A DNA stretch of 64,000 nucleotides from contig NC_083421.1 of assembly GCF_020745735.1 (NCBI RefSeq), positions 62,735,001 through 62,799,000 of the forward strand, read 5' to 3'. Below are positions 29,221 to 56,837 of this stretch, one piece after another; the stretch's first letter is position 1; every line of letters starts with the position of its first letter. Position numbers and translations under genes: made by a program. Origin of the DNA: Hemiscyllium ocellatum. Its lineage: Eukaryota. The notes beneath the pieces are model-generated. The model saw nothing but the letters and a program-made list of their open reading frames with translations, made no database searches and was not told the DNA's origin.

Positions 29221-29559
<339 letters not shown>

Positions 29560-30674
29560 TGATCTTGCAGTTACATTAAAAGAGAACTAGATTTACATGA
29601 GTTAGGTGATGTCAGGCAACAGTTTGCACAAGGGGTAGTGGAAAGCTGGGATTTTGTAAGAATGCTGTTGGGTCTGCAAATTATTAACAGTTAACTCCGA
29701 TTTTAGTTAGCTTGGTTCCTTAAAAATTATACTTCTCTATCTGTTGTGATTTAATTGAATGATGGAATAGGCTCAAGGGACTGAATGCCGTACACCTGTT
29801 CCTACCCTTATCCAACCTGAAAAGTCTCAGTGGGTCTTGTGATTTGGTACTTCATTATTCCCTAACATAGCTCAGAGAAGTGTAGGTGCATCCTGATATG
29901 TTTGTTGCAGTTCTTTTCAGAGCCTCGCTGTAAGGTGATGAAGGCAGTACAGTGTGACTTTGAGCAGTTATTTGGTAACTGCTTTAGAATTGAACTAGAT
30001 CATAATTGGTAGATGGATTTTAAGTGTTGACCAGCCTTGGCTTGTTTCTGTGTAGAATTTGAGTCAATCCAAATTGATGTGATTCATTTGCATTCAATTA
30101 AAAAACATCTGTTCAGTTAACATTGCATGGAAAAGATTTAAATTTATATCTCACTGACATTCACTACAGTGTGTTTTTTCCCCTCTATGTATTATTGTAC
30201 TTTGCAATAATTTAGTTGCCAAATAATTGATGTTCATTAGATATAAACAGTCATCTTCCACTACTTTGAATCTGCTAGGTACTGAGCCATGCATATCAGA
30301 CACTTCAGACCCATGTCTGTTGAGTTAATTTGGCTTTACTGTGAAAATTAGCTTTATAATGCTCTCATGGTGAAGTTTATTTATCCTTCTTTGTTCCTCT
30401 TTCTTCAATTTTACTGTTCTTGGGAAAGCCTGATGGCCAGTGTTCTGCTAAATTTTATCTTTGCAACAGTTACGAGGTAAAACCTGATCAGATTAACATT
30501 GGAATTCTTCAAGTTTTTCTCAACACTTGAATACTGTGGTGTAATATGTTTGGTTGCATCTTTGTTGTCTTTGAAGGGAATTTTAAACTGACTTAAATTC
30601 AATTTTGAAAATTATTACATTCTAGCATTATGTACCTAAAAGTTTTGTTGAACACTTATAATTACACAACTTAA

Positions 30675-35040: not shown

Positions 35041-36210
35041 CTGTGTATTGTCTTTACTGCTTGTTGTGTACATCTGGAAGTGTATTGCCAATACAAATAT
35101 TGATTTAATCTCATCCAACAGAAATGAAGCAGTTAGCATTTAATGGGCTTTTGGATATTTCTAAAAACTTTAACATACAATATATTATGGGATGTGACAA
35201 TGTAAATGGAACATTACCACAGGAATGCTTACTGATACTGAGATGGTATTGACACTTTGTAGTTGTCATTGACTACTTGATTAATCTCTCTTTTCGAGGT
35301 GAACTATCCATTCAGGCTAGTGAAAAAGATGGGTTTTAAGATTTTAGTTAAACTGTCCATTAACTTATTGAAGTATATTTCAAATATTTGAATTACAATA
35401 TTCAAAATGTGGAGTATTTAGTACAGACTCTATTCAAAAAAAAGTTGGTATTTCAATGCAACATTATTAATGGTAGACAACATTAATTACTTGTATTCTT
35501 TCGGAGGGATGTTTAACTATTTCAGTCTGTTTGGACACCTCTAGCAGGATGGCCTTTAACCCAGCCTTTCCATGAACCCTCAAACTGGTAGTTATAGATA
35601 TTTTTAAGCACCTATTCAGATATGCAATTACTTCCTTCTGGAGCAGGTAGGTCTTCTGGCAAAAGGTGAGGATATTACCATTGTGCTACAAAAGCCCTCT
35701 GCAATAAGGTTGCAGTGGAGTACTAAACCAACTACTACCTAAACATCAGTTGATCCTGTTCTGTTCTCTTATCAAGCTTTTCAGAGATGTTAACACACCT
35801 CTGGGTCTCCTTGGTATCATTCTATCCTGGTCATGATTAGGTTGAGTGGTGGTACTTTATGCACCTACAGTTTCTGCAGGATTTTAACCATAGAAACTGG
35901 ATTTAGTGTGGTCGACATAATTTGGTCTTTACTGTTTAATACTTGTTATGGGTGTACCAGACAATTACAATATTCAACAAAAGTGGAAACATTGGAAAGT
36001 AAAGTTGAATTCCTTACATGCAATCATAAAACCCAGATCAAGCTTAAATCTTAGACAAAAGTGCTTTTGTGCCACATCTTAGGGTGCTAATTCCCTTTCT
36101 CAACATACAAACTTGAGAAGAATGCATATAAATTGAGTACATTTCATAAAGTGAAGATATAGGTATTAGTTATAAATATTTTTATTTCTTTACAAAAAAT
36201 AGGTTTGATT

Positions 36211-36365
36211 TCAACTCCGGTAGGACTTGGGTACCATGAGAAGTGTTGCAGCAAAATTTTCCTGGAGGAGTCTGTCTATTATGAGTGCAACAAATGTCTC
36301 ATCTGAATCCTCAAACTCTTCATCTGTAACATGCTGAGGCCAGATGCTGGGCTGAAATGACCAAC
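36211..36365 (-). CDS. Secreted cereblon-like (CULT) protein, coding exon 2 with stop
   Basis: Acceptor tttcaacag|GT TGG completes HLGWSF; continues QPSIWPQHVTDEEFEDSDETFVALIIDRLLQENFAATLLMVPKSYRS*; AATAAA on the - strand at 36186-36181; total 175 aa. Confidence 0.92.
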
Positions 36366-37039
36366 CTGTTGAAATAAAATCCAAACATAGGGTGAATAGA
36401 CAAAACTTAATCACATTATAAAATGTGCCATAAATATTCCAATGTTTCAAAGGTCAGTAAAACTGAGCTAAAGGACAAAACATTAAAGGTTTCAATGGCC
36501 TAATCAAATAAGATTTAAGCAGTATTAAAAAAGGAGCAATGTTTAGGGAATGAATTTTCAGAGCTTATGTCTAGAACATTGAAGTCACAGCTGCCAACAG
36601 TGGGACCAAATTCATAGGGAATGGTGTAATCAGGCAGAGGGGAAATGCATAGATCTGAAAGGGTTGAATCAGGTTATAGCAATAAATTGAAGAGATATTT
36701 TGAACACAAGAGGATTTTTTTTTTGAAAAGGAGACACTGGTGGATTGAAAGCCAAAGTGAATAAGCCCAGTAAGGAATGCAGGAGAACATTGTGGACCAG
36801 TAATGACAGGGTGTGTTGTTAGGTGTAGGCCATAGAATTTTGGATGAGCTCAATTTCAGATCAAAGAGGTTGGAGACTGGTCTGGAAAGGGGGTAGAATC
36901 AGGAAATAGCTTGTGGTGGGATCTTAAGTTTAATATAGGAACTCAAGTATATTTTTAAGAGATCACAGATGACATACAGCTCAACTCTCTGGTTTCCTGA
37001 TTTTGTTTAACTAACCACCTTATCTGTATTTCCCACAGA

Positions 37040-37560
37040 TAAAATGGTCAGGCAGCTTAGGAAATTTGACATGTCCATAAGGATCTTTAACTTTTATAGA
37101 TGCACCATAGAAAGCATACTATCTGGCTGCATAATGGCCTGGTATGGCAACTGCTCTGCCCAGGACCGTAAAACTACAAAAGATATATGCTCAGCCCAGA
37201 CCATCCCTGGACTGCACTTACACCCTTCATTGCTGCAGAAAGGCTGCCAATATCAAAGACTCTGCCCACCCCAATAAGGCTCCTATAATCTCTTCCATCA
37301 GGCAGAAAATACAGAAGCTTGAATACATGTACCAATAGGTTCAAGGACAGCTTCTTCCTTTTTGTTATTAGACTGATGAATGGACTGGCCGCTAACTTCA
37401 AATAATGTTGATCTATCTTCGTGCATCTTACGTGCAGTGTAATCTTTATGCCTCACTGTCCAAGCACCCTATGATCTATGTGCCCTTACTATAATCTGTC
37501 AGTATTGCTCACAAACAAAGCTTTTCACTGTACTTGGGTACACAAGACAATAAATCAAAG
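37040..37560 (+). mobile_element. Rex/Babar- or L2-group LINE 3' fragment
   Basis: FYRCTIESILSGCIMAWYGNCSAQDRK motif; tail with aataaatcaaa. Confidence 0.7.
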
Positions 37561-37889
37561 TTAAAAGAAAATTGTAAAACCTTAAATTGAAACTTTGAAA
37601 TTTTCAAAATCAACTTGGGTATGGGTTGGCATTCTAGATTACAAAGGCTTACACTAATTTTAAAAGATGTGCCTTCCATTTTTGGCTGTCTTCCGCCACC
37701 AATTACTTCCCTTATTATCCTTTTAGAAATTCTAATCATCTTTTAAAAGACAACGTTTGATCAGAAGCTTAAACGGACCAGCCACACAAATACTTAAGTT
37801 ACAAATGGACTTCTGTACCAAGTGACTCACCCAACCTTTCCATCACCTGAAAAGCACAAATAGAGGGAATGTTGTAGTAATACCATAAT

Positions 37890-39300
37890 ATAGGAGCAGA
37901 ATTAGACCATTCAGCCCCTCATGATTACTACACCATTTTATCATGGCTAACACATTTTTTAGCCCCATCTTCCTGCCTTCTCTTTATAACCTTTGATCCC
38001 CATCGTGATCAAAAGGCTATTTATTTCTTGAATACACTCAATGACTTGACTTTCACAGCCTTCTGCAATGATTTTTCAGATTAACCACTCTGAATTGAGA
38101 TGAGGAGGAATTTGTTCAAAAAAAGTCATCCCCTCACTTTAAGGCTGTGTCCCCAGGTCCTAGACACTCTCAATGGAAACATTTTCATTTCCACCCTATC
38201 TAGACCCCTCATTCTACATTTCAAGATCCCCCCCTCATCCTTCTAAACTCTATAGAGTACATTCCCAGAGCTATCCTTGTGATAAGTCCTTTATCACATT
38301 TTTCTTGTGAACCCGTCCTTTGGCAGCACATCAATCCTTTGAAACCAGCCCAAAACTGCTCACAATATTCCAAATGAAGTTTGACCAGAACTTTATACAG
38401 CCTAGCAGTACATCTCTAGCCCTTGAAATTAATGCTAACATTAAACTTGTATGTTAACCTGAAAGGAATCCTGAATTAGGACTCCCCACTTCAAAATTTC
38501 CAAAGCCGTTCCCCATTTAGAAAATAGTTTACACACTTCTACCAAAGTGTATAACTCACTTTCCAACATTGTATTCCATCTGCCACTTCTTTGCCCACTG
38601 TCCTAGCCTATCCAAGTCCTTCTGCAGCCACCCCGCTTCCTCAACATTACCTGTCCTTCCAGCTAACTTTGTCACCTGTGAACTTAGTTTGCCCTCCATC
38701 CCATTGTACGTTATTAATATGGACAAAGGAAATAGCTGTGGTCCCAACACTGATCCGTGCAGATCTCCACTAATCACAGGTTACCATCCTGACAAAGACC
38801 CCTTAGCCCCACTCCCTGCCTTCTGGCTGTCTGTTAGTCAGTCAGTCAATCCTCTATCCTAAGTGAAAGTGAGTACTGCAGATGCTGGACATTAGAACCA
38901 AGAGTGTGGTGTTGCAAAAGTACAGCCAGCCAGGCAGCATCCAAGGAGCAGAAAAATCGACGTTTTGGGTAAAAGCCCTTCATCAGGAATCCTCTATTCT
39001 AATCTTGTCTATAACACCACAGGCTCTAATCTTATTTAGCCATCTCCTTCAGAATTCAGGCGTGTAATCCATCTGGTCTGGGTGATTCATCCACCTTCAA
39101 ACCTTCCAGCTTCTCCAGCACCTTCTCCTTAGTGATGGCCATGACACTCACTTCTGCCCCCTGACACCCTTGTAATTCTGGTACACTATTGGTGTCATCC
39201 ATTGAAGATTGATGCAAACTACCTATTCAGGTCCTGATTATTTCTTGGTTTTCCCCATTCCTACCTCTTCAGCCTCAATTTCCAAGCCAACTCTTGCTTC
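37890..39300 (-). mobile_element. Degenerate CR1-type LINE with a small Penelope-like terminal insert (~38862-38990)
   Basis: GSVLGPQLF and LQKDLDRLGQWAKKWQMEYNVGK remnants. Confidence 0.75.
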
Positions 39301-39836
39301 TTTACAAACATTCTCAATGAGAAAATAGGAAGCATGTTACTAAGTTTGCAGATCACACCAAAATTGGTGGTTCTAGTGGACAGTGAAGGAGGGTATATAA
39401 GAGTACAACAGAATCTTGATCAACTGGGCCAATGAGCAAAGAAGTGGCAGGTGGGGTTTAATTTACATAAGTGTGAAGTAGTGCATTTTGGTAAGACAAA
39501 CATGCGCAGGACTTGCACAGTTAATGGTAGAGACATGGGAAGTGTTGTTGAAGAGAGACTTAAGGAATCAGGTACATACTTCCTTAAAAGTGACATCACA
39601 GAGGGACAGGATGGTGAAGGTGGTGTTTGGCAAGCATACCTTCATTGGTTAAAGCATATGAGCTGCGGTTGTCCAGGACATTTGTGACGCCACTTTTGGA
39701 GGATTGCATACTATTCTGGTCACCCTGCTATAGGGAGTGTTATTAAATTGGAAAGAGTGCAAAGATGATTTACAAGGATGCTATACGGGCTGGAGGGTTT
39801 GAGTTTTAAGGAAAAGCTAGGACTTCTTTCCTTGGA

Positions 39837-41061
39837 CCGAGGTTAGAGTGGTGCTCGAAAAGCACAGCAGGTCAGGCAGCATCCGAGAAGCAGGAAAATC
39901 GATATTTCAGACAAAAGCCCTTCATCAGGAATACAGGCAGGGTGCCTGCAGAGTGGAGAGATAAATGAGAGCGGGGTGGGGGGGTGGGGAGAAAGTAGCA
40001 AAGAGTACAACAGGGGTGGGGATGAAGGTGATAGGTCAGAGAGGAGGGTGGAGTGGATAGGTGGAAAGGAAGATAGGCAGGTCGGACAGGTCAAAGGGAC
40101 GGTGCTGAGCTGGAAGGTTGGAACTGGGGTGAGGTGGGGGAAGGGGAATTGAGGAAATTGGTGAAGTCCACATTAATGCCCTGGGGTTGAAGTGTTCCAA
40201 GGCGGAAGATAAGGCGTTCTTCCTCTAGGCGTCAGGTGGTGAGGGAGCGGCGGTGGAAGCAGCCCAGAACCTGCATGTCCTCAGCAGAGTGGGAGGGGAA
40301 GTTGAAATGTTGGGCCACAGGGCAGTGGGGATGATTGGTGCGGGTGTCCCAGAAACGTTCCCTAAAGCGCTCTGCTAGGAGGCGTCCAGTCTCCCCAATG
40401 TAGAGGAGGCCATTGGGAGCAAAGGATACAATAAATGATATCGGTGGATGTGCAGGTAAAACTTTGATGAATGTGGAAGACTCCTTTGGGGCCTTGGATG
40501 GAGATGATGGTGCAAGTTTTGCAATTCCTACAGTGGCAGGGGAGGGTGCCAGGAAGAGAGGGTGGATTGTTGGGGGTGAGTGTGGACCTGACCAGGTAGT
40601 CACAGAGGGAACAGTCTTTGTGGAAAGGGGTGGGGAGGGGAATATATCCCTGATGGTGGGGTCCGTTTGGAGATGGCGGAAATGTCATCAGATAATGTGG
40701 TTTATGCGAAGGTTAGTAGGATGGAAGGTGAGCACCGGGGGGGGTTCTGTCCTTGTTACTGTTGGAGGGGTGGGGTTTGAGGACGGAGGTGCAGGATGTG
40801 GACGAGGTGCATTGGAGGGCATCTTTAATCACGATGGAATGGAAATTGCAGTCTCTAAAGGAGGCGGCCATCTGGTGTGTTCTGTGGTGAAACTGGTCCT
40901 CTTGGGAGTAGATACGGCAGAGGAATTGGGAATACAGGAGGGAGGGTGGGATGAGGTGTAATCCAGGTAGCTGTGGGAGTCCGTGGGTTTATAAAAAAAT
41001 GTCAGTATCAAGTCAGTTGTCATTTAATGGAGATGGAGAGGTCCAGGAAGGGGAGGGAAGT
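39837..41061 (-). mobile_element. Penelope-like retroelement 3' part (RT C-terminus + GIY-YIG endonuclease + terminal repeat) inserted in a + strand CR1
   Basis: FYKPTDSHSYLDYTSSHP and LLYIGETGRLLAERFRE motifs; 16-bp TSD gacttctttccttgga at 39821-39836 and 41062-41077. Confidence 0.88.
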
Positions 41062-41662
41062 GACTTCTTTCCTTGGAGTATAGGAGGTTGATGGGTGACT
41101 GGATTGAGGTTTATAAAATTAGGAGCACATAAGGTGAATAACAAAGGTCTTTTCCCGAGGATGGAGAGTTTAAAACTAGAAGCATAATTTTAAGGTGAGA
41201 GGAAAAAGTGCCAGGGACCCAGGTTCGATTCCAACCTCAGCCGACTGTCTGCATGGTGTTTGCACGTTCACCCTTTATTTACTTGAACTGCTGTGGGTTT
41301 CCTCCCGGTGCTCTGGTTTCCTTCCACAGTCCAAAAGATGTGCAGGTTAGGTGAATTAGTCATACTTAACACTATGTGCAATTAGGTGCATGAATCAGGG
41401 GTACAGTCAGCGCCAGGGTCAATTCCAGCCTTGGGCGACTGTCTGTGTGGAGTTTGCACATTCTCTGCATGGATTTCCCCTGGATGCTCCGGCTTCCTCC
41501 CACAATCCAGACAGGTCAGGTGAACTGGCCACGCTAAATTGTCCATAGTTGTGAGGTGCATTAGTCGGGGGTGGGTTACTCTTCGGAGGGTCGGCGTGAA
41601 CTTGTGGGGATTCTAATTCAAAAAAGTGGTAAATATCGATAATGAAACGAACGTAAACAAAC

Positions 41663-42035
41663 CTAAGTGATTATGGCACCTGGGGCACGTTGCCACTGTC
41701 CAAGAGTGTCCAGGGAACCAGGAGAACTGCTCCTCCGCCGGCCAGTGTCTGTGTACAGTGGCCTTCTTGAAAGTGAGTACCTGGAAGCGAAGTCCCTGGG
41801 GGTTCTGGAAAAGCTGCACCGGGACCCTGCGCTCGCCGATCACCGTGTCGTTACGCTGGGCTAAAGCCAGGGCGCTGGCCACGAACTTGAGGTCCCGGCT
41901 GGCGGCCACCTCGAAGCCGCATGACCTGCACAGTAAGAGCTCATCTGGGGAACCTCTCTCCTCCTGGCTGGCGTTGTGGCTGCTCACGGCAGGCAGCAGC
42001 CACGCCAACAGCAAAGGCACCAACACCTGCCACAT
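41663..42035 (-). CDS. Secreted cereblon-like (CULT / thalidomide-binding domain only) protein, coding exon 1
   Basis: ATG at 42035; hydrophobic signal peptide MWQVLVPLLLAWLLPAVSS; CRSC, NPQG, FSWFPGHSWTVATCPRCHNHL(G) match the CULT motifs CxxC, NPxG, SWFPGYxW, CxxC, HLGW; donor TTAG|gtttgt in phase 1; upstream acceptor ttttgcag| at 42098 implies a non-coding 5' exon. Confidence 0.92.
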
Positions 42036-42965
42036 CCTCCAGGCCGCTTCTCTGAACTCCTTCAAAAACTTTTATTTTCTTTGGTTCGCCTAGACCCCTG
42101 CAAAAGTGATTTAAAATTAAATATATAAACCCCATTCAGTTCCTAAGTTTTGCCTGAAGCTTCCTCAATGTTATGACACAACTTTGTATCAAATATGTAT
42201 CTATTTTACTCCTCTTTTAACTGTAGCCTCCCCACAGCTGATATTTAAAGGAACAGCACACAGGAGGGGAAAGATGGATCTCGCTGCATATAGGGATTCT
42301 TCAGACTATTTTCACCCCCCTGCTGGCTGGAGGATTCCAATTCATTTGATGGTGCTTGGGGAGGGTTCAAAAGGCTATTCGACCAGTCCTGCCTCTGCTG
42401 GTTCATTTGACCGAACCATCAATTCAGCCTCCCTCACATCCCCTCCATGTTTCCCTGTTCATCTCTTTGGGGGAAAAGGCAACAATAGCTCGTGTTTCTA
42501 AGGCATCTTTCACTGAGGGTTGCTTAAATAACAGCACATAAGCTAGTCAGCAAGTCACCCTTTATTTACTTGAACTGCTGTGCTCTTCCAGCACCACCAA
42601 TCCAGAATCTGGTTTCCAGCATCTGCAGTCATTGTTTTTTACCTTTTATTTACTTGTCAAACAATGTGGCACTGGAAAAGCACTGCAGGTGAAGGCAGCA
42701 TCTGAAGGGCTGGAAAGTCAACGTTTTGGGCATAAAGAATGAGAAAGGGGAAGAAGGCTGAGATAAATAGAGGGGTGGGGGACTCTCCTAATCTTCAGAT
42801 GCTGTGCTTGCCAACACCATACATTTTAGCTCTGACTCTCGAACATCTACAGTCCTCACTTCCTCCTAGTTGCTGAAAATCTTACTATGAAGCCTCTTCC
42901 AAGGGTTTAGATCATAGTGGTGCTGGAAAAGCATAGCGGGTCAGGCAGCATCCAAGGATCAGGAA

Positions 42966-43280: not shown

Positions 43281-45229
43281 GATACGTCAGAGGGCTGGGT
43301 GGAGCAGATAGTTGGGAAGGGAGATTGTCCCCATGACCTGTCCTACCTGCCAATGCTGAGCTCTTCCAAGTGTGCCTATCTTGAAGAAGTTCTCCTCCTC
43401 TCTCCCACAAGGATCTCAGCAAATCTCTCTCCCCCTGTATTTCTTCCCCCCCAGTCATCTCCTCTGCCCTGAAGTTACTGCTCTCCTGCATCCACCTATC
43501 CCCCAAACCTCTATTTATCTCTCAGTCCACTCTTCCCCCCCCCCATTCCTGATGAAGGATTTTATGCCCAAAACATTAACATTCCTGCTTCTCAGATGCT
43601 GCCTGACCAGCTGTGCTTTTCTAGTACCACACTTTTTGACTCTGACTCCCCAGCATCTGCAATTCTCACTTTCTCTTAGCTCAGAGTCAGTCCTACAAAC
43701 TGAGAAGATTCTAAATCTCATGTTAATTTTTTTTCTTTACAGCAAAAAACAACAGCAAATCTTTATTAAATTTCCACCATCAGGAAGTAAGGAGAAACCC
43801 AAGTGGCCAATGACAAGTAGTGCCCTTCTCCTTTAATATTGGTCAGCTGGGGTTTTCCTGATTTGGTCCTGGTTAACAACCACAATCAAGGACCTTAATC
43901 AATGAGATCCACCTGGTTCCAATCACTACAATTGCCAACTCTATTTGGACATAGTCCAAGAGATTGTTCTGATGAGCACCATGACCCCACACTCACTGTC
44001 TTGATATGTCCATCTGCAATGTGTTATGCAAAAGAAAATTGACAGTTTGGACTCGTGTTACAATTCAGTTTAATAGAGTGCAAGGGGATTTGACCATAGG
44101 CTCTTGAAAGAGCATCAGTGTGCTCATGCCCGCTATTGAGAGAATGTGAGAGAGGACACACCCACTTTTGAGAGACTGTGAGAGATTGGCATGGTGGCTC
44201 AGTGGTTAGCATTACTGCCTCACAACGCCAGGGACCAGGGTTCATTTCCAGCCCCAGGTGACTGTGTGGAATTTACACATTCTCCCTGTGTCTGCATGGG
44301 TTTCCTTCAGATGCTCTGGTTTCCTCTCATAATCAGGTTAGGTGAATTGGCTATAATAAATTGCCCATAATGTTCAGGGATGTGTCGGCTCGGTGCATTA
44401 GTTAGGAGAAAATGTAGAGTAATAGATTGAGAGAATGGATCTGGGTGGGTTATTCTTTAGAGGGTCGGTGTGGACTTGGTGGGTCTAAGGGCCTGTTTCC
44501 ACACCGTAGGGATTCTATGAAACTTACAGCACCCTGAATGACAATGTGAAAAAGGTGCTTACTCTTGTGAACATGGTTTTAAAAGTAGGATTGTTCTTTT
44601 AGGACAGAAATTGGGATTTTTTTCCCCTCAAAGAGTTGTGCAGTATTGGAATTCTCTCCAGAAGGTCAAGCAGCAGCCGAGGAACAGGAAAATCGACTTT
44701 TCAGGCATAAGCCCTTCCTGATGAAGGGCTTATGCCCAAAATGTCGATTCTCTTGCTCTTAGGATGCTGCCTGACCTGCTGTGCTTTTCCAGCACCACAC
44801 TGTGGCCTCTGATCTCCAGTCCTCACTTTCTCTCCTACTCTCCTGACAAGGTGTGAATTATTCAATATTTTTAAGGCAGAAGTAGTTAGAATTTTACTAA
44901 GTAAACATTGAAAACCTTGCAGATGCTGAAAATCAGAAACAAAAACAGAAATTACTGGAAAAGCTGAGCAAGTCTGGCACCATCTGTGGAGAAAAAGCAG
45001 AGTTAACGTTTCAGGTCCAACATTTAAAAGGCATCTGATGGGTATATAAATAGGAAGGGTTTGGAGGGATGTGGACCAAATACTAGCAAATGAGATTAGA
45101 CTAGATTAGGTTAGGATATCTGGTCGGCATGGACGAGTTGGACCAAAGGGTTAAGGTCCGAGATGATCACCTCTATGACTCTATTACCCTTCTTCAAACA
45201 CAATGTGGACCTGTGGCCTCTTTACAATC

Positions 45230-45491
45230 TCGACAGATGACATCACATGGACGAGGGCCCGCCCGCTACCTTCTATTGGTCGGAAATTAGTGATTGACAG
45301 CACAACATGTGATCGCCGTTGTCCAACTGGCGACTGGGTCGCGCGGCTCCAGTTCGGGAGCGCGCTGCGTTTAAAAATATTTCAAACGGCGCATCCGTTA
45401 GTCTGTCAACTGTCTGAAGGGAATAAATGGAGTGGGAATGACCGAACACCACCAGCTTTTCGGGGGGAGAAAGAAATAAAATTGCTGAGGG
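45230..45491 (+). promoter_or_regulatory. CpG-rich promoter/5'UTR of PKN3
   Basis: CpG cluster upstream of exon 1; TGACATCA 45238-45245, GC box-like cccgccc, reverse CCAAT ~45276-45280, TGATTGACAG 45291-45300. Confidence 0.6.
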
Positions 45492-45515
45492 ATGATGGCG
45501 GGGGATTGCAAGCAG
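45492..45515 (+). CDS. PKN3: PKN3 exon 1 (MMAGDCKQ)
   Basis: Short first coding exon analogous to PKN1 MASDAVQ; donor CAG|gtcaga in phase 0, fitting exon 2; directly after the CpG promoter. Confidence 0.7.
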
Positions 45516-45764
45516 GTCAGAAAAAGTTACAGAAACAAAATCAAAAGTTGCTGGAGAGGCTCAGCCAGTCAGGGAAAAATTGCGAATCTGTTCTTAATGT
45601 TTCCTCACTTTACAAGAAGGACAATCCCAGGGAGAGCCCTGTTCAAATGGATTGTTTTGTTTTTAACGGGCAGCGTTCATACTTCAGTGTCAGTTGGTTA
45701 TGGGTTTGAGTCTCCATTGGGAACTCACGGGCACAACAATTGGACTAACGCTCCTATTGCAGGA

Positions 45765-46352
45765 CTGAGGGGGAGCCGCGCTGTCGGAGGGTCAGTGCTG
45801 AGGGGGAGCCGCGCTGTCGGAGGGTCAGTGTTGAGGGGGAGCCGCGCTGTCGGAGGGTCAGTGCTGAGGGGGAGCCGCGCTGTCGGAGGGTCAGTGCTGA
45901 GGGGGAGCCGCGCTGTCGGAGGGTCAGTGCTGAGGGGGAGCCGCGCTGTCGGAGGGTCAGTGCTGAGGGGGAGCCGCGCTGTCGGAGGGTCAGTGCTGAG
46001 GGGGAGCCGCGCTGTCGGAGGGTCAGTGCTGAGGGGGAGCCGCGCTGTCGGAGGGTCAGTGCTGAGGGGGAGCCGCGCTGTCGGAGGGTCAGTGCTGAGG
46101 GGGAGCCGCGCTGTCGGAGGGTCAGTGCTGAGGGGGAGCCGCGCTGTCGGAGGGTCAGTGCTGAGGGGGAGCCGCGCTGTCGGAGGGTCAGTGCTGGGGG
46201 AGTGCCGCGCTGTCGGAGGGTCAGTGCTGAGGGAGTGCCGCGCTGTCACAGGGTCAGTGCTGGGGGGGGGAGCCGCGCTGTCGGAGGGTCAGTGCTGAGG
46301 GGGAGCCGCGCTGTCGGAGGGTCAGTGCTGAGGGGGAACCGCGCTGTCGGAG
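45765..46352 (+). repeat. 33-bp minisatellite, ~18 units (CTGAGGGGGAGCCGCGCTGTCGGAGGGTCAGTG)
   Basis: Direct reading: 13 near-identical units followed by variant units; explains the spurious 268-aa and 174-aa ORFs. Confidence 0.97.
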
Positions 46353-48186
46353 CGATAATGTTTCCAATAATACTTTGTACCAGAAACCTGATTGTGATTA
46401 TGCGTAAAATAAATAGCTGTTTCTGCAAAATAAAATCTTGGTTAGGTAGCATCGTGACAATATTATTGAACTGCGTCGGTGAGTCATCTAGAAGTTCAGT
46501 TTAATGATATACCGACAAGTGCTCAGAGCCCACTGACAATTGGTGACTTGGCTACTGAAGAAAAACTAGTAATGTTGACTGAGTTTACTGGATTGGTATA
46601 AAGGTTTGTTAGATTATTAATGTCCTGCAAGGAAGGAAATTTGTCATTATCCGTTGTTTGTAGAATGTGACTCCACGCCCAGAAAAATGTAAATATCCTC
46701 TAAAATAGCCAAACAAGCTGTTAAATTGTTTGGGGTAGGCAATAAATAAATGCTGAGCTTTGTGGTTATGTGCATACCCAGTTAATGATTTTATTTAATG
46801 AGTTGTTTTCCCTTGTTTACAGGCCAGTATTTATCCCTAAACCAACATTGTTTTAGTAGTTATATTGGCATTACCTGCATCTCTCAGCTGTTGATAGAAT
46901 CTTTCAGTTTTCCTATCAGAGTTTGTTCTTATTAACAGTGACTGCAGTTCAAACACTATCTACTGGCTGTTAAATGCTTTAGATCATAAGATAATGGAAG
47001 TGGCTATGTCAAAAGAAGAACAAAACGGTTTGAAATTCACTGCAGCTTTAGCAGCATCTGTGAAGAGAACAACAGAATTAATGTTTCAGATCCATAGGCC
47101 TTTCTTGAGAAGGAATGGAAATATGTTTTGTTTACCTGATTCCTTATTAGGCCTGAGGAAAATTAAAACTTTCTAAGGTGTTTAATAGGCCATGTGAGAT
47201 GTTGCAACTGTTTAGGCCAAATATTCAGAGGTGCAAGTGGCTTAAATCACTTGTTTATTTCTATTTGATCCTCTGTGAATATATCTCAGCCTTTTGTTCT
47301 AATTTGGAAATTGTTTGGAATAATTGAATGGGGCAATGCAGAAAACAGATATAGCTAAGCATCCCCTGAAAGAGGGAAAAACCAATTATACAGAAGTTAA
47401 TCCAGGCTAATATTTGGGAACAACTTTGTTTTAATCAAATTTTTGAAGGAAATATAGTAAGTGTAACCACACCATAAGTGAATGATGTAAAGAAAAAGAA
47501 ATTGGAATGTTAGGTGTTTAACATTAAAATTATCATTGGTAACATTAGTGACCTAAAACACAAGGAGCAGGAATATGACATCTAATATCTTGGCCTGATC
47601 TGACCAAGATAACTTGAAATTTTAATTCTGTTCCAATATTAAGAGTAAGCTATCAATCTAGGTATCTTTTTAAAGCATTTACTTTACAGTAGGTTATTGA
47701 TCCATTTGGTGCCAACTTTGGCTCACTTGCAAAAACAGGAATTGCGGGAGAAACTTCTGAATGGTTCTGAAGAAGGATAACTGGACTCAAAACATTGACT
47801 GTTTTCTCTCCTCAGATGCTGCCAAGCTTACTGAGTTTCTCTAGCAATATCTCTTTTAATTCGTTTCAGATCTCCAGCATCTGTAGTTCTTTGTTATACT
47901 TGATAACACCCAGTCTGTCAGAAGAATTTAGTGATGGAACAAACCAGGATTTGATCATGTAATCTAACTAGTGTTTTAGGCAATGCTAATATCATTTAGC
48001 TGCATTTTCAGACGTTCTGTCTTTCAGGTCAGACATCATATTAAACCAAACCTCTTTAGCCAGAAGCTAATGATATACTTCAAAATTCAACTGCTCTTGT
48101 TATTACAGGTGCTGCAGTAACTTGCTGAAAATTGCAATTTTATCTGCTGTCATACTGAAAATGTGTAACCATTCATTTACTTTTAG

Positions 48187-48487
48187 AGCAATTCCTACCA
48201 GCTGTTGATCAACCAGAGGCTGGACCTGGAAGAAGGAGCTGATCTCTTGGATCCAGATATACAACAAAAACTTGATGAAGTAAAAGATCTGATTCGACGT
48301 GAAATACAAAAAGAGCTAAAAATCAAAGAGGGAACAGAGAATTTGCGTAAAGTGACAACGGACAAGAAAAATCTGGCTCATGTGGAAAATATTTTGAAAA
48401 CCTCAAATCGCAAATTGAAACGTCTGCATTGGGAACTTCAGGAGCTGAATGCACGAATTATGGTTACAGATAGGGACATTCGGGGAG
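48187..48487 (+). CDS. PKN3: PKN3 exon 2 (HR1a Rho-binding repeat)
   Basis: ttttag|SNSYQLLINQRLDL...QQKLDEVKDLIRREIQKELKIKEGTENLRKVTTDKKNLAHVENILKTSNRKLKRLHWELQELNARI...; |gtgagt. Paralog assigned from DYNC2I2-SET-PKN3 synteny. Confidence 0.92.
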
Positions 48488-50211
48488 GTGAGTGCAATTT
48501 GCGGCTGAACTTAGACCAGAAGATCTAGCCCTTTTTCTGAAGATAAAATGTTAGCTTTATATCTCTACAAAAGTGTGATTGTATTGGAATGCAGCTTCGT
48601 ATTGAGCTCTGACAGCGAAAAGGAGCTTGAGAAATGCAATCAGTGATAATTTCTTGATTCAACTGTTGATCTTTCTGGGACTATGGGAATGCATTTTACT
48701 CTTTCATTAGTTCACTGGCTAGGTGTGAACATCAGAGTGTGCTACATTGTGACACCTGGTATGTGGTAAGTAATATAAGCTTGGCTGGGGTACCAGTGAA
48801 GATGCCAAAGTAGGTGTGTCAGATCCTGAACCAGCAGCAAAATAAAATTATCAATGATTCCTATTCTTGACCACTTTCTGGTACCTCTTGCTGAAAAGTG
48901 CACATGTATGCAGATTTAACTATTAAGTCCAATTTTTTTTTCACTGCAACAATTGCTGACTTTAGAGTGTCACAGGTCACTGGAATAATTAATAGAGGGT
49001 GCCAACAGTATATGAAAATGATAGTCATTCTGGGAGAGGAGAAGATTAAACAGAACCGAGTAAATAAACCAACCTTATCTAATTGTGATGAAGAACATGC
49101 ATGCTGCCAATGATTGGACAGACTTAGAGGACATTGGGTAATTCTGACAGTAAAAAAAGCATTGCTTTAGTTAAATTGAGTATATGATTCTTGGAGGGGA
49201 TTTCATATAATCACAGAATCCCTGCAATGCAGAAAGAGGTTATTCAGCCCATCAAGTCTGTCACAAACCGCTCCAAAGAGCGTCCCACCTGGCTTTAATA
49301 TCTGAGGAGATACTATGGTGCTGAACATTGTGCATTCAACAGCAAACATTCTCACTTCTGACCTTATGATGGAAGGAAGGTCATTAATGAAGCAGCTGAA
49401 GATTGTTGGACTGAATATCACTATCCTGAAAAATTCTGTAGCGATGTCCTGAGATGACTAAGCTCCAACAATCTCAACCATTTTTCTATGTGTCAGGTAT
49501 GATTCCAATCAGCAGAGAATCTGTCACTTGATACCCATTGATTCCATTATTGATTGGTCAAATGCAGCTTTGGTGTTAAGGGTTCTCACTCTCTGTCACT
49601 CTCCCCTTGGGAATTCAGCTCTTTTGTCTCTGTTTAAACTCAGGCTGTAATGTGGTCAGGAGCTGATGAGCCCTGGTGGAACCCAAACTGGGCGTTACTG
49701 TACAGGTGCTGCTTGATAGCACTGTTGATGTGTTCCATCACTTTACTGATGATCAAGAGTGGACTGAAAGGACAGTAATTGGCAGGGTTGGATTTGTCCT
49801 GCTTTTTGTGTACAGGAAGTACCTGGGTAATTTTCCGTATTGTCAGGTAGATGCCAGTGTTGTATCTGTACTGCAACAGCTTGGCTATGGTAATATTGGG
49901 CAAGCATCCAAGAGAATTCACTTTTTTGAAATGGGATGCTATCCATCTAAATGTCCACATAAGCATACATTGGTGCAGTTTAGTATGTTCATGAAGTCCA
50001 CCACTTTCATAATGCACCATCTGCTAAAACACAAATTTTGAAAGCTGGATGCAGTGGTATTGATTTATAATGATATTTATGGAAATGTAAATTAAACAAG
50101 GTGATTGGTCCAGTGGGAGCCAATAGGTTCTTTGACTTCCTTTAGTTTTGAGTCATGAATGCTAGGCAACAGCAAAAAGCACCCAGAGTTTCTGTTCTTT
50201 AATGTCCCCAG

Positions 50212-50659: not shown

Positions 50660-51965
50660 CTTAAAAATGTGTTGCTGGAAAAGCGCAGCAGGCCAGGCAG
50701 CATCAAAGGAGCAGGAGAATCGGTGTTTCAGGTATAAGCCCTTCTTCAGGAATGAGGAGGGTGTGCCAAGCAGGCTAAGATGAGAGGTAGAGAGGAGGGA
50801 CTTGGGGAAGGGGCGTTGGGAATGCAATAGGTGGAAGGAGGTTAAGGTGAGGATGATGGGCCGGAGAGAGGGTGGGGACGGAGAGGTTGGGAAGAAGATG
50901 AATGTCAAGAAGGCAGTGCGGAGTCCAAGAGTTGGGACTGAGAAAAGGTGGGGGGAGGGGAAATGAGGAAGCTGGAGAAATCTACATTCATCCCTTGTGG
51001 TTGGAGGGTTCCTAGGCGGAAGATGAGGTGCTCTTCCTCCAGACGTCGTGTTGCCATGGTCTGTCGATGGAGGTCAAGGACCTGCATGTCCTTGGTGGAT
51101 GGGAGGGGGAATTAAAGTGTTCAGCCATGAGATGGTTGGTTTGGTTGATGCGGGTGTCCCAGAGGTGTTTTCTGAAACGTTCCGCAAGTAGGTGGCCTGT
51201 CTCCCCAATGTAGGGGAGGCCACATCGCGTGCAGCGGATGCAGTAAATGTGTGCGGAGGTGCAGGTGAATTTGCGATGGATATGGAAGGATCCTTTGGGT
51301 CGCTGGAGGGAAGTGAGGGGGGAGGTATGGGCGCAAGTCTTGCATTTCTTGCGGTTGCAGGGGAAGGTGCCAGAGGTGGGGGGTGTGGACCTGACAGAGC
51401 TGCAGAGGGAGTAGTCTTTCCGGAACGCTGATCGGGGAGGGGAGGGAAATATATCCTTGGTGGGGTCTGTTTGGAGGTGGCGGAAATGACGAAGGACCAT
51501 CGCCAGACCATGGCAATCCAACGCCTGGAGGAAAAGCGCCTCATCTTCCACGTAGGAGCCCTCCAACCGCAACGGATGAATGCAGATTTCCTTCAGCTTC
51601 CTTATTTCCCCAACATCCCCTCCCCCACCCCCACACCCCCCACCCCCAACCTCACCTCACCTTTTCTCAGTCCCAGCCCTCGGACTCGGCACCACCTTCT
51701 TGACCTGCAATCTTCTTCCTGACCTCTCTGCCCCCACCCCCTCTCCAGCCTATCACCCTCACTTTAACCTCCTTCCACCTATCGCATTCCCAACGTCCCT
51801 CCTCCCTACCTTTTTATCTTAGCCTGCTTGGCACACCCTTCTCATTCCTGAAGAAGGGCTTATGCCCGAAACGTCGATTCTCCTCCTTTGCTGCCTGACC
51901 TGCTGCACTTTTCCAGCAACACATTTTTCAGCGCTGATCTCCAGCATCTGCAGTCCTCACTTTTT
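50660..51965 (-). mobile_element. Penelope-like element (GIY-YIG region) with an inverted duplicated terminus
   Basis: CIRCTRCGLPYIGETGHLLAERFRKHLWD on the - strand; orientation flips at ~51497 so that the terminus is repeated on the + strand; tttaaag on both flanks. Confidence 0.85.
51844..51879 (+). ncRNA. Minimal hammerhead ribozyme motif, intact core
   Basis: ATTC-CTGAAGA-A-GGGC-TTAT-GCCC-GAAA-CGTC-GATT. Confidence 0.75.
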
Positions 51966-54735: not shown

Positions 54736-56837
54736 GTCATCTTCAAGGGGTTTAGCTTGAATAAAGAAACCATGAGTAACAGAAGGAGGATTGGGATTGC
54801 ATAGTATTTTTGGTCTTATTTTTTAATCTTTCCAGCTTGCCTTGTTAATTACAGTAGCTACTGAATACAGGAAATATGCAAAGGTATTTCTCAGAGGCGG
54901 TAAGTTGGATGGGAGAGGATTATGTTGAGAAGGTATAGGTGGTCAGTCTTGTGGCAATTGGTGCTTAGGGTTTAGTGTTTTTTTTGGTACTAGTGCTCAA
55001 TAATGCAATCTGTATAGTTCATGTTGAGAGGGGAACAGGCAAACGTTTCAGAGTAACAGTTTTCAGTTGACAGAGCAGATAAGTTTTGGAATTGTGCCAC
55101 CTCATGATGAAGTATTGCTAAGATGACAATAAGGTCAAGAGTGATGTTTGGCTACACAATGAGTAGTTTAAATGCATTTCAGCTGGGTAGCTGTATTCAT
55201 GACTTCCAATGGTATTATTACATGTTTTATTTATACGGTCACATTGGAGTTTTAGCTGGTCTGAGATATCACAGAGGGCATAATCTTCAGAAGAGACCGC
55301 ATTTAAGATAAATGAAGTATTTCTTCTCTGTGGGTACGGAATCTGTGGAATTCTTTGCAGAGGACTGTCAAGACTATGAATATATTTCATGACCATGTGG
55401 AGTTGAGGATGATCAGTTCAGCGGCTATCTAATTGAATTGCGGAACTGGCTCGATGGACTGAATTCTGCTCCTACGTCTTATACCCTAACCCTGCTGTAA
55501 GCATACTTTCAATCACAGAAATAACCCTCTACTATCACCACCATCTTCTTGCCTCTTGGCTAGTTTCAGATCCAACATGCCATTTTGTTTTGGATCTCTT
55601 AGGTTCTTAATTTTTTTAACTGATATGGGACATGAAGGATGGGTTGCACCTGAACAGGAGGGACACAAATGTCCTAGGTGGGAGACTTGCTCATGTGATT
55701 CGGGAGGATTTAAACTAGTTTGGTGGGGGGGTGGGATCAAAGCCCATATGAGAGGGGGCCAGTTGCAGATGGGGCAGTGACAGGATGTAGTGAATCTATC
55801 GGGAAGGCTTCTCATGCAATGAAACAAAGGAATCTGTTAAAGTGTCTGCTTTAACATAAGGAGTGTCAGAAACAAGAGTGACTAACTTAGAGCATGAATC
55901 AATACTTGGGGCTACGATGTTGTAGCCACAACGGAGACGTGGGTTTCACAGGGGTAGGAATGGTTGCTTGATGTTCCAGGGTTTAGAACGTTTTAAAAAG
56001 AACAGGGAGGTTGGAAAAAGAGGAGGGGGTGTAGCATTTCTAATTGGAGAGTGCATCACAATTACAGAAACAAAGGTTATTGAGGAAGGTTTGTCTACTG
56101 AATCAGTATGGGTGGAAGTTGGAACAGCAAGGGAACAGCCACCGCATTGGGGATTTTCTACAGACCCCCTAATAGCAGGAGAGAGATGTGTAGATTCTGG
56201 AAAAATGCAGATGTAGCAGGGTGGTTGTTATGGGTGATTTCAACTTTCCCAATATCGACTGGGACCTCCTAAGTGCAGATGGATTGGATGGAGCCATTTT
56301 TGTCAAATGTGTTCAGGAGGGTTTCCTCACTCAGTATATAGACAAACCAATGAAGGGAGAGGCCATTTTGGATTTGGTGCTCGGCAATGAGCCAAGACAG
56401 GTGTCAGATCTCGCAGTGGGAGAACACTTTGGCAACAGTGATCACAACTACCTCACATTTACCATAGCCTTCGAGAGGGAAAGGAGCAGTTACGAAGGGA
56501 AGATATTTAATTGGGGGAAAAGGAAATTGTGACACTATCAGACAGGAGTTGGGAAGTACAGACTGGGAGCAATTGTTCCACAGGGTACAGCAGATATGTA
56601 GAGACTGTTTAAAGAGCAGTTATTGCGAGAGATGCACAAATTTGTTCCTGAGATAGGTAACATTAAGGAACCTTGGATGACGAGTACAGAGGAGCTTCTT
56701 GTCAAAAGGAAGAAGGCAGCTCACGTAAGGTGGAGGAAGCAAGGATCTAGCAAGGCATTAGAGGATTACAGGCTTGCTAGAGAGGAGCTCAGAAATTGAC
56801 TGAGGATAGCCAGGAGGGGGCACAAAAAAGGCTTAGT

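What the first reader, a model, noticed from the sequence alone, without database searches (positions are those of the whole stretch)
36211..42035. Intact gene for a secreted, stand-alone cereblon thalidomide-binding (CULT) domain protein
Seen: two exons splice in phase into a 175-aa ORF with a ~19-aa signal peptide, two N-glycosylation sequons (N21-A-S, N62-D-T), both Zn-binding CxxC pairs (C36/C39, C117/C120), NPQG (N78) and the aromatic cage W106/W112/W126 plus F128 and H123. Established: these positions correspond to human CRBN N351, W380/W386/W400, F402 and H397, which bind glutarimide drugs and C-terminal cyclic-imide (aspartimide/aminoglutarimide) degrons. The LON-like/DDB1-binding part needed for E3 ligase function is absent. 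As I recall, signal-peptide CULT-only proteins have been noted as an uncharacterised animal subfamily. Inference: this is an extracellular or lumenal reader of cyclic-imide protein damage or of uracil-like ligands, i.e. a ubiquitin-independent cereblon-type recognition system.
Basis: partly seen in the sequence, partly recalled or inferred. Interest (0 to 1): 0.88.

Follow-up and report, generated by a model that had tools for sequence, protein, structure and literature searches.

The report
Shark secreted cereblon-like CULT protein gene
This is an intact two-exon shark gene for a small signal-peptide protein made only of cereblon's thalidomide-binding (CULT) domain; it belongs to an animal family described in 2015 whose ligand and function are still unknown.

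Summary
On the minus strand, exon 1 (42035-41663) and exon 2 (36365-36211) join through a GT...AG intron, in phase, into a 175-aa ORF.

The product has the cereblon thalidomide-binding fold (VIA-align Z 15.7, rmsd 2.2 A to human CRBN 318-424). PDB sequence searches return cereblon entries, apart from one non-significant hit. There is no LON or DDB1-binding part.

It is the shark orthologue of zebrafish si:ch211-51h9.7. That family is the 'secreted eukaryotic CULT proteins' of Lupas et al. 2015 (placozoans to fishes, not beyond).

The gene is under strong purifying selection: dN/dS is 0.12 for shark versus skate exon 1, and 0.08 in the CULT core. It keeps its place between a PKN-like and a NAP/SET-like gene. 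It has a signal-peptide-like N-terminus and a family-wide N-x-S/T sequon at N62.

So it is real and functional, but not a new kind of thing. The 'cyclic-imide damage reader' idea is plausible and untested.

Two features I did not find in the 2015 paper by term search:
- a C-terminal tail conserved from coral to shark (P170 invariant in 87 tail-selected sequences);
- Phe at the position of human His378.

Interest is moderate to low.

The parts
41663..42035 (-). Exon 1 coding part: codons 1-124 plus the first base of codon 125. It carries the signal peptide, the first CxxC, the N62 sequon, NPQG, W106, W112 and the second CxxC.
   Evidence: Translation. 100% tblastn match over residues 1-125. E 3e-7 to the cereblon TBD. 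GC is 61% against 44% in the intron.
41979..42035 (-). Predicted signal peptide, residues 1-19. The h-region is VLVPLLLAWLLPAV, with V at -3 and S at -1, so cleavage would fall after S19.
   Evidence: Hydropathy and the (-3,-1) rule. The same V/L-S-G/S pattern precedes H/Q/Y-N-x-S/T in other elasmobranchs. No SignalP was available.
41850..41852 (-). Codon of N62, the first residue of the N-D-T glycosylation sequon.
   Evidence: An N-x-S/T at this column is present in 43/43 fish-plus-annelid sequences and in 84/107 family representatives. Human cereblon has N-E-I there.
41700..41720 (-). Codons W106 to W112 (W-F-P-G-H-S-W), which supply two of the three cage tryptophans.
   Evidence: Aligned to human W380 and W386. 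In the representatives W106 is W in 109/119 and W112 in 118/119.
36366..41662 (-). The single intron: 5,297 nt, GT...AG, phase 1.
   Evidence: The same exon end (…H-L-G | gt) is seen in skate genomic contig L001. Teleost genomic gene calls read into the intron at the same place.
36262..36365 (-). Exon 2, CULT part: the last two bases of codon 125 through residue 159. Includes W126, F128 and the last beta-strands.
   Evidence: The AF2 model aligns over residues 31-159 to human CRBN 318-424.
36214..36261 (-). Conserved C-terminal tail, residues 160-175 (E-N-F-A-A-T-L-L-M-V-P-K-S-Y-R-S). Most of it lies beyond the solved CULT domains.
   Evidence: Nearly identical in the six elasmobranch orthologues compared: four are identical, one has a single change and the two batoids end QR instead of RS. 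15/16 identical in coelacanth. Recognisable in coral, starfish, abalone and annelid. P170 is invariant in 87 sequences that were selected for carrying the tail motif. AF2 gives a helix at 160-166, with pLDDT 73 then 66.
36211..36213 (-). Stop codon TGA.
36181..36186 (-). AATAAA polyadenylation signal, about 25 nt after the stop.
42122..42127 (-). TATA-like hexamer 92 nt upstream of the ATG. The start context GAGGATGT has G at -3, and there is an in-frame stop upstream.
   Evidence: This is consensus only, not evidence of use.
41780..41781 (-). Internal cryptic donor (CCAG|gtactc) within exon 1. Joined to the same acceptor it gives a frame-shifted 113-aa product that lacks the Trp cage.
   Evidence: The product matches the annotated 'isoform X2' of Stegostoma tigrinum (P0022).

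Best explanation
This is the shark orthologue of the 'secreted eukaryotic CULT' family (zebrafish si:ch211-51h9.7).

Shown here:
- It is an intact two-exon gene under strong purifying selection.
- It sits in conserved synteny between a PKN-like and a NAP/SET-like gene.
- The product is a single cereblon-type beta-tent (CULT) domain with the four apex cysteines and the three-tryptophan cage.
- An N-terminal hydrophobic leader precedes the domain, and a conserved 16-residue C-terminal tail follows it.
- There is no LON or DDB1-binding region, so it cannot act as a CRL4 substrate receptor.

Inferred:
- The leader is a cleaved signal peptide (after S19), so the protein enters the ER.
- It is N-glycosylated at the family-conserved N62 sequon and is secreted, or stays in the lumen.
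- It uses the Trp cage to hold a small cyclic imide, lactam or uracil-type group, as cereblon and bacterial MsCI4 do.
- It therefore acts as a stand-alone binding or recognition module, not as part of a ubiquitin ligase.
- The conserved tail either caps the domain surface or is the handle for a partner.

Which natural ligand it binds is not known.
For: Gene model:
- Splice sites and ORF.
- Full-length 175-aa orthologue at 97% identity, plus orthologues across sharks, rays, sturgeon, gar, bowfin, teleosts and coelacanth.

Selection:
- Nei-Gojobori dN/dS for shark versus skate exon 1 is 0.12, and 0.08 in the CULT core, with dS about 0.8-0.9.

Synteny:
- PKN-like (HR1+Pkinase), then the CULT gene, then a NAP gene, in Chiloscyllium and Mustelus.
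- The same order in the window: an HR1 exon at 48205-48528 and a NAP exon at 29233-29562.

Fold:
- AF2 mean pLDDT 87, core 95-98.
- VIA-align Z 15.7, rmsd 2.2 A over 104 residues to human CRBN 318-424, and equal scores to MsCI4.
- Foldseek's top 50 hits are all cereblon.
- The family profile hits only cereblon in the PDB, E 2.4e-14.

Secretory route:
- The h-region and the -3/-1 residues fit a signal peptide, and there is no second hydrophobic segment.
- A hydrophobic N-terminus is present in 82/90 representatives, and the N62 sequon in 84/107.
- Lupas et al. 2015 describe the family as carrying a secretion signal and cite a sand-fly salivary homologue.
- An ESM Atlas cluster of arthropod homologues is named 'Putative conserved secreted protein'.

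Expression in relatives:
- A 1,092-nt teleost contig carries the uninterrupted CDS across the junction.
- Teleost genomic gene calls break at that same point.

Ligand class:
- Solved CULT domains bind thalidomide, glutarimides, valerolactam, dihydrouracil compounds and deoxyuridine (PDB titles).
- CRBN recognises C-terminal cyclic imides (abstracts; PDB 9nr3 'GLUL-cN').
Against: - There are no transcript or protein data for this species.
- No signal-peptide predictor was available, only rule-based arithmetic. The n-region has no basic residue.
- Ligand binding is inferred purely from conserved pocket residues.
- The position of human His378 is Phe here and varies across the wider family (H, D, F, A, Y), so specificity may differ from cereblon.
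- A Cys4 zinc site would be unusual in the oxidising secretory pathway. The cysteines might form disulfides instead.
- With the shallower alignment the pocket loop (residues 101-110) had pLDDT of only 66.
- I found no functional study of this family in the searchable literature.
Confidence: 0.6

Rival explanations
1. The protein would be an extracellular or lumenal reader of C-terminal cyclic imides (aspartimide, aminoglutarimide) on damaged proteins. That would make it a ubiquitin-independent counterpart of the cereblon degron pathway.
For: - The residues that in cereblon surround the imide are kept: N78, W106, W112, W126 and F128.
- CRBN recognises C-terminal cyclic imides, and a CRBN structure with a cyclic-imide substrate exists (9nr3).
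- An oomycete cluster is annotated with MRH/PRKCSH domains in most members, and its model aligns to the model of the nearest chordate CULT cluster. Lupas et al. describe an oomycete group with a signal sequence, a CULT domain and a carbohydrate-binding domain. From my own knowledge, MRH/PRKCSH domains occur in ER glycoprotein quality-control proteins, which hints at a lumenal quality-control setting.
Against: - There is no direct evidence.
- The same cage binds uridine, lactams and many small heterocycles in MsCI4.
- H378 and H357 of human CRBN are Phe here (F104, F84), so peptide-backbone contacts may differ.
- No downstream effector is known.
Confidence: 0.2
2. It binds a free small metabolite, such as uridine, uracil, dihydrouracil or another lactam. 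It would act as an extracellular carrier, scavenger or sensor rather than a protein-damage reader.
For: - Bacterial CULT was crystallised with deoxyuridine and with dihydrouracil-type compounds (4v31 and 9gjq).
- Lupas et al. name the domain for 'binding cellular ligands' and cite uridine binding.
- Homologues occur in arthropod saliva. From my own knowledge, many salivary proteins are small-ligand binders.
Against: - From my own knowledge, uridine affinity in known CULT domains is weak.
- The strongly conserved tail suggests a protein partner, which a simple carrier would not need.
Confidence: 0.2
3. The hydrophobic N-terminus is an uncleaved signal anchor or another targeting signal. The protein would then be membrane-tethered or organellar rather than soluble and secreted.
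For: The n-region lacks a positive charge. In teleosts the N-terminal extensions are long and variable.
Against: - The h-region is only about 14 residues and contains two prolines.
- Small residues sit at -3/-1 and are conserved among elasmobranchs.
- The conserved sequons imply lumenal exposure either way.
- The sand-fly homologue is reported to be salivary.
Confidence: 0.07
4. It is a decaying or non-functional cereblon fragment, such as a retro-copy or pseudogene.
For: Automatic annotation calls the orthologues 'protein cereblon'.
Against: - The ORF is intact.
- The intron position is conserved, so it is not a retro-copy.
- dN/dS is 0.08-0.12.
- Synteny is conserved.
- Orthologues run from cnidarians to coelacanth.
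- Identity to the cereblon TBD is only about 30%, so it is an old, separate lineage.
Confidence: 0.02

Closest known systems
Secreted eukaryotic CULT proteins (group II of Lupas, Zhu & Korycinski 2015, PLoS Comput Biol 11:e1004023; zebrafish si:ch211-51h9.7 / NP_001121712.1)
   Same: - Signal sequence plus a single CULT domain and nothing else.
- Invariant CxxC pairs and the three tryptophans.
- Found in animals up to fishes.
- The window's protein is a direct orthologue: 52-70% identity to teleost members, and the teleost proteins carry the zebrafish gene's name.
   Different: Nothing in kind. Term searches of the paper did not turn up two features seen here:
- the conserved C-terminal tail ending P-K-[STA]-[YF]-x-S;
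- the family-wide N-x-S/T sequon at N62.
Cereblon (CRBN), substrate receptor of CRL4
   Same: - The thalidomide-binding/CULT domain has the same fold (Z 15.7, rmsd 2.2 A, about 30% identity).
- The cage and apex residues are the same.
   Different: - No LON domain and no DDB1-binding helices, since the protein is only 175 aa.
- It carries a signal peptide.
- H378 and H357 of human CRBN are Phe here.
- It has extra loops around residues 97-103 (H-W-P-A) and 131-148.
- It has a distinct C-terminal tail.
- The database name 'protein cereblon' for the orthologues is a misnomer.
Bacterial single-domain CULT protein MsCI4 (MGR_0879, Magnetospirillum gryphiswaldense)
   Same: - A stand-alone CULT domain.
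- Structural match Z 15.7, 31-33% identity.
- From my own knowledge, it also has Phe at the position of human H378.
   Different: - It is cytosolic and bacterial.
- It has no signal peptide, no sequon and no conserved tail.
Oomycete signal-peptide CULT + MRH/PRKCSH proteins
   Same: A CULT domain placed in the secretory pathway.
   Different: - They carry a C-terminal carbohydrate-binding (MRH) domain.
- They are a more divergent CULT group.

Membership tests
CULT domain (cereblon thalidomide-binding domain, beta-tent fold) | Significant sequence similarity to cereblon TBDs | tested here: met
   phmmer of exon 1 gives E 2.9e-7. The family profile gives E 2.4e-14, and every hit is a cereblon.
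CULT domain (cereblon thalidomide-binding domain, beta-tent fold) | Two CxxC pairs at the apex | tested here: met
   C36/C39 and C117/C120 are present and invariant in 87 homologues. Metal binding itself was not testable.
CULT domain (cereblon thalidomide-binding domain, beta-tent fold) | Three-tryptophan aromatic cage | tested here: met
   W106/W112/W126 align to human W380/W386/W400. The W-W-W combination is present in 91/107 family representatives.
CULT domain (cereblon thalidomide-binding domain, beta-tent fold) | Beta-tent fold | tested here: met
   AF2 pLDDT 87. Z 15.7 and rmsd 2.2 A over 104 residues to CRBN 318-424. The model is of orthologue P0001, which differs from the window's product at 5 of 175 positions.
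CULT domain (cereblon thalidomide-binding domain, beta-tent fold) | Binds glutarimide- or uracil-type ligands | not testable with these tools
   Needs a binding assay.
Secreted eukaryotic CULT proteins (Lupas 2015, group II) | CULT is the only domain | tested here: met
   The protein is 175 aa. Pfam gives only a sub-threshold Yippee-Mis18 hit over the CULT region. The structural match covers residues 31-162.
Secreted eukaryotic CULT proteins (Lupas 2015, group II) | N-terminal secretion signal | tested here: met
   Rule-based only: a 14-residue h-region, V-x-S at -3/-1, and no other hydrophobic segment. SignalP or DeepTMHMM was not available.
Secreted eukaryotic CULT proteins (Lupas 2015, group II) | Orthology with the zebrafish or teleost member | tested here: met
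   Best hits are the 'si:ch211-51h9.7' proteins of many teleosts and of coelacanth, at E 1e-72 to 1e-90 with the family profile. The intron position is shared.
Secreted eukaryotic CULT proteins (Lupas 2015, group II) | The protein is actually secreted | not testable with these tools
   The only evidence is the sand-fly salivary homologue cited in PMC4287342.
Cereblon proper (CRL4 substrate receptor) | LON-like domain and DDB1-binding region N-terminal to the CULT domain | tested here: not met
   Only 30 residues precede the domain, and they are a signal peptide plus a linker. There are no other matching exons in the 64-kb window.
Yippee/Mis18 (Pfam PF03226) | Score above the Pfam gathering threshold | tested here: not met
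   16.4 bits against a cut-off of 26.6. This is a distant relative only, as Lupas et al. state.

The most novel reading that the evidence does not exclude
The family would be a secretory-pathway or extracellular receptor for C-terminal cyclic imides, or a related imide mark. Its invariant C-terminal tail (…L-L-x-x-P-K-[ST]-[YF]-x-S-COOH) would be the handle that passes bound cargo to a clearance or quality-control partner. This would be a ubiquitin-independent, cereblon-type damage-recognition system that arose before cnidarians and bilaterians split and was lost in tetrapods.
Probability: 0.12. Interest if true: 0.75.

Novelty: new member of a known kind. Interest (0 to 1): 0.3.

Why it matters
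A CULT-only paralogue that is routed into the secretory pathway has been conserved from corals to coelacanth. That shows the same pocket is used outside the ubiquitin system, and for a purpose nobody has determined.

The practical points are these:

- **Fish models.** Fish used to study thalidomide, including zebrafish, carry a second potential imide-binding protein that mammals lack. It could act as a sink or an off-target.
- **A tractable protein.** The family is small and soluble, which makes it a natural tool for asking what CULT domains bind in nature.
- **The shark gene itself.** It adds an orthologue, a selection estimate and conserved synteny. It does not add a new principle.

Tried and rejected
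- **Pfam.** Scans of the two exon products gave nothing. The full-length orthologue gave only a sub-threshold Yippee-Mis18 hit. Pfam appears to have no CULT model, so this is not evidence against membership.
- **Orthologue DNA.** I tried to fetch genomic DNA for shark orthologues P0001, P0002 and P0003. The files were too large, so no DNA came back. As a result, dN/dS could only be computed for exon 1, against one skate Logan contig.
- **Literature.** Searches for the zebrafish gene name and for 'secreted CULT' or 'cereblon-like' found no functional study. One broad search was uninformative.
- **Earlier scan notes.** None for this place or these words.
- **Pseudogene or retro-copy reading.** Rejected on dN/dS, intron conservation and synteny.
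- **Second copies.** tblastn of the window found no other CULT exons.
- **Model coordinates.** These could not be inspected, so I could not determine where the C-terminal tail packs relative to the pocket.
- **Surrogate for the window's product.** The window's own spliced protein could not be given by reference. P0001, which differs at 5 of 175 residues (none at a functional position), was used for the folds and profiles.


Full report
**1. The observation**

The minus strand between 42035 and 36211 was read and assembled.
- Exon 1 starts with ATG at 42035 and ends at 41663 before a GT donor (TTAG|gtttgt).
- Exon 2 begins at 36365 after a pyrimidine-rich tract and an AG (ttcaacag|GTTGG). It ends with TGA at 36213-36211.
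- The two parts (373 + 155 nt) join in phase into 175 codons. The intron is phase 1, inside codon G125.

These are C36/C39, C117/C120, N78-P-Q-G, W106, W112, W126, F128, H123, and the sequons N21-A-S and N62-D-T.

Several consensus features fit a gene:
- The start codon has G at -3 and an in-frame stop upstream.
- A TATA-like hexamer lies 92 nt upstream of the ATG.
- An AATAAA lies about 25 nt after the stop.

Exon 1 is 61% G+C against 44% for the intron, and tblastn finds no further CULT-like exons in the 64 kb. The window contains no N.

**2. What the product is**

Sequence evidence:
- Exon 1 alone matches cereblon thalidomide-binding domains in the PDB at E 3e-7, and all significant hits are cereblon.
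- A profile of 32 family members matches 46 distinct PDB sequences, all cereblon, with best E 2.4e-14.
- Alignment to the 442-residue chain 8cvp_B, taken to be numbered as full-length human CRBN, gives these equivalences: N78=N351, W106=W380, W112=W386, C117/C120=C391/C394, H123=H397, W126=W400, F128=F402.

The position of human H378 is F104 here, and that of human H357 is F84. From my own knowledge, H378 hydrogen-bonds the glutarimide.

Structure evidence:
- I folded orthologue P0001 as a stand-in. It differs from the window's product at 5 of 175 residues, none at a functional position.
- With 32 sequences the mean pLDDT was 76, and the pocket loop was soft.
- With 87 sequences it was 87, with the core at 95-98.
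- Foldseek's top 50 PDB hits were all cereblon or MsCI4.
- VIA-align gave Z 15.7, rmsd 2.2 A over 104 residues, mapping model 31-159 onto human CRBN 318-424. Scores to the bacterial single-domain protein were equal.

Pfam has no model that captures the domain. The only hit is a sub-threshold Yippee-Mis18 match at 16.4 bits against a cut-off of 26.6. Only 30 residues precede the domain, so there is no LON or DDB1-binding part.

**3. It is a live gene**

- A 175-aa protein annotated in Chiloscyllium punctatum is 97% identical over the whole length, including exon 2.
- Full-length orthologues exist in Mustelus, Scyliorhinus, Heptranchias, skate, manta, sturgeon, gar, bowfin, many teleosts and coelacanth.
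- A genomic skate contig (L001) ends its exon at the same H-L-G|gt position.
- Nei-Gojobori comparison of exon 1 between the window and that skate gives dS 0.91, dN 0.11 and omega 0.12. In the CULT core omega is 0.08.
- In Chiloscyllium and Mustelus the gene lies between a divergently transcribed PKN-like kinase (HR1 + Pkinase) and a convergently transcribed NAP-family gene. The window has an HR1 exon at 48205-48528 (+) and a NAP exon at 29233-29562 (+) in the same arrangement.

No transcript data exist for this species. In a teleost, however, a 1,092-nt contig carries the uninterrupted coding sequence across the junction. Teleost genomic gene calls read into an intron at that same codon. Spliced mRNA is therefore made in relatives.

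**4. Evidence for the secretory route (inferred)**

- Residues 4-17 form the only strongly hydrophobic stretch.
- V at -3 and S at -1 fit signal peptidase cleavage after S19.
- No other segment approaches transmembrane hydrophobicity.
- In other elasmobranchs the leader sequence varies, but the V/L-S-G/S | H/Q/Y-N-x-S/T pattern is kept.
- Among 107 family representatives with all four cysteines, 82 of the 90 that have a complete N-terminus carry such a hydrophobic leader.
- 84 of the 107 representatives, and all 43 fish-plus-annelid sequences, carry N-x-S/T at the column of N62. Human cereblon has N-E-I there.

A conserved sequon argues for exposure to the ER lumen. Lupas et al. describe the family as carrying a secretion signal and cite a sand-fly homologue found in saliva. 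An Atlas cluster of arthropod homologues is named 'Putative conserved secreted protein'.

One caution: a Cys4 zinc site is unusual in an oxidising compartment. The four cysteines might form disulfides instead, and this could not be tested here.

**5. What is known**

The family is published. Lupas, Zhu and Korycinski (2015, PMC4287342) define the CULT domain. [quoted passage not shown]

My searches agree with that range:
- Named members come from coral, starfish, abalone, a land snail, a tube worm and coelacanth.
- No tetrapod appears among the named proteins in the 120 listed hits.
- The exhaustive search found 472 clusters at E <= 1e-10.
- I found no functional study of the family.

The gene is therefore one more orthologue of a known but uncharacterised family. 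The database name 'protein cereblon' is a misnomer.

**6. Mechanism**

Shown: a cereblon-type pocket on a stand-alone domain with a leader peptide, under purifying selection.

Inferred: it is a secreted or lumenal binding module for an imide-, lactam- or uracil-type group.
- Solved CULT domains hold thalidomide, glutarimides, valerolactam, dihydrouracil compounds and deoxyuridine in this cage (titles).
- Cereblon reads C-terminal cyclic imides (9nr3).

I give it about 0.2, and a free-metabolite binder about the same.

A weak contextual hint for a lumenal quality-control role comes from oomycetes. An Atlas cluster there is annotated with MRH/PRKCSH domains, and Lupas et al. describe an oomycete group with a signal sequence, a CULT domain and a carbohydrate-binding domain.

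**7.

First, the last 16 or so residues (E-N-F-A-A-T-L-L-M-V-P-K-S-Y-R-S) lie mostly outside the solved CULT domains.
- They are nearly identical in the six elasmobranch orthologues compared. Four are identical, one has a single change, and the two batoids end in QR instead of RS.
- They are 15/16 identical in coelacanth.
- They are recognisable in coral, starfish, abalone and annelid, usually ending two residues after the aromatic.
- P170 is invariant in 87 sequences, though that set was selected for carrying the tail motif.
- AF2 predicts a short helix at 160-166 with moderate confidence.

A tail this conserved suggests either a structural cap or a partner-binding handle. Term searches of the 2015 paper found no mention of it.

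Second, the pocket position of human H378 is Phe in fishes and variable across the family, so ligand specificity need not equal cereblon's.

**8. Verdict**

- This is a new member of a known kind.
- Interest is about 0.3. The open question of what secreted CULT proteins bind is real and testable, but this gene does not by itself change what is known.

Noticed in passing
window 36214-36261 (-), residues 160-175: The C-terminal tail is highly conserved. It is nearly identical in six elasmobranch orthologues, 15/16 identical in coelacanth, and recognisable in coral, starfish, abalone and annelid. The motif is L-[LI]-x-x-P-[KR]-x-[YF]-x-S at the very C-terminus. Most of it lies outside the solved CULT domains, and term searches of the 2015 family paper did not find it mentioned.
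   Followed up: partly
window 41780-41781 (-): There is an internal donor (CCAG|gtactc) within exon 1. Spliced to the normal acceptor it gives a frame-shifted 113-aa product without the Trp cage. That product has the same structure as the annotated 'isoform X2' of Stegostoma tigrinum (P0022). A second truncated isoform is annotated in Pristiophorus (P0005).
   Followed up: partly
window 48205-48528 (+) and 45000-46500: An exon encoding an HR1 repeat (Pfam E 9e-16) belongs to a PKN-like kinase gene transcribed divergently from the CULT gene. A CpG-rich stretch (CpG o/e 0.7-0.9, GC up to 62%) at 45.0-46.5 kb is probably that gene's promoter and first exon.
   Followed up: partly
window 29233-29562 (+): An exon matches the NAP (nucleosome assembly protein, SET-like) family (E 9e-7). 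It is convergent with the CULT gene, and the same neighbour is found in Chiloscyllium and Mustelus.
   Followed up: partly
window 56221-56532 (+), 59859-60359 (-), 51012-51572 (-): These are retroelement debris: an endonuclease-reverse-transcriptase domain (E 2.5e-7), a weak RVT_1 match and a weak GIY-YIG match. The GIY-YIG match may come from a Penelope-like element.
   Followed up: no
P0046 / P0193 (Heliothis virescens 'Protein cereblon', 1737 and 1772 aa): This was the top hit of the exhaustive profile search, with 22 separate matches to the second half of the CULT profile (positions 88-140). It is either a real tandem array of half-CULT units or a gene-model artefact.
   Followed up: no
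residue F104 (window 41724-41726, -): The position of human CRBN His378 is Phe in 40/42 fish-family sequences. In the wider secreted family it is H, D, F, A or Y, so it is the most variable pocket position.
   Followed up: partly
ESM Atlas cluster, oomycetes: A 372-aa oomycete cluster is annotated with MRH/PRKCSH domains, and its model aligns to the model of the nearest chordate CULT cluster. This matches the oomycete group of Lupas et al. It places a CULT domain beside a domain type that, from my own knowledge, is typical of ER glycoprotein quality control.
   Followed up: no
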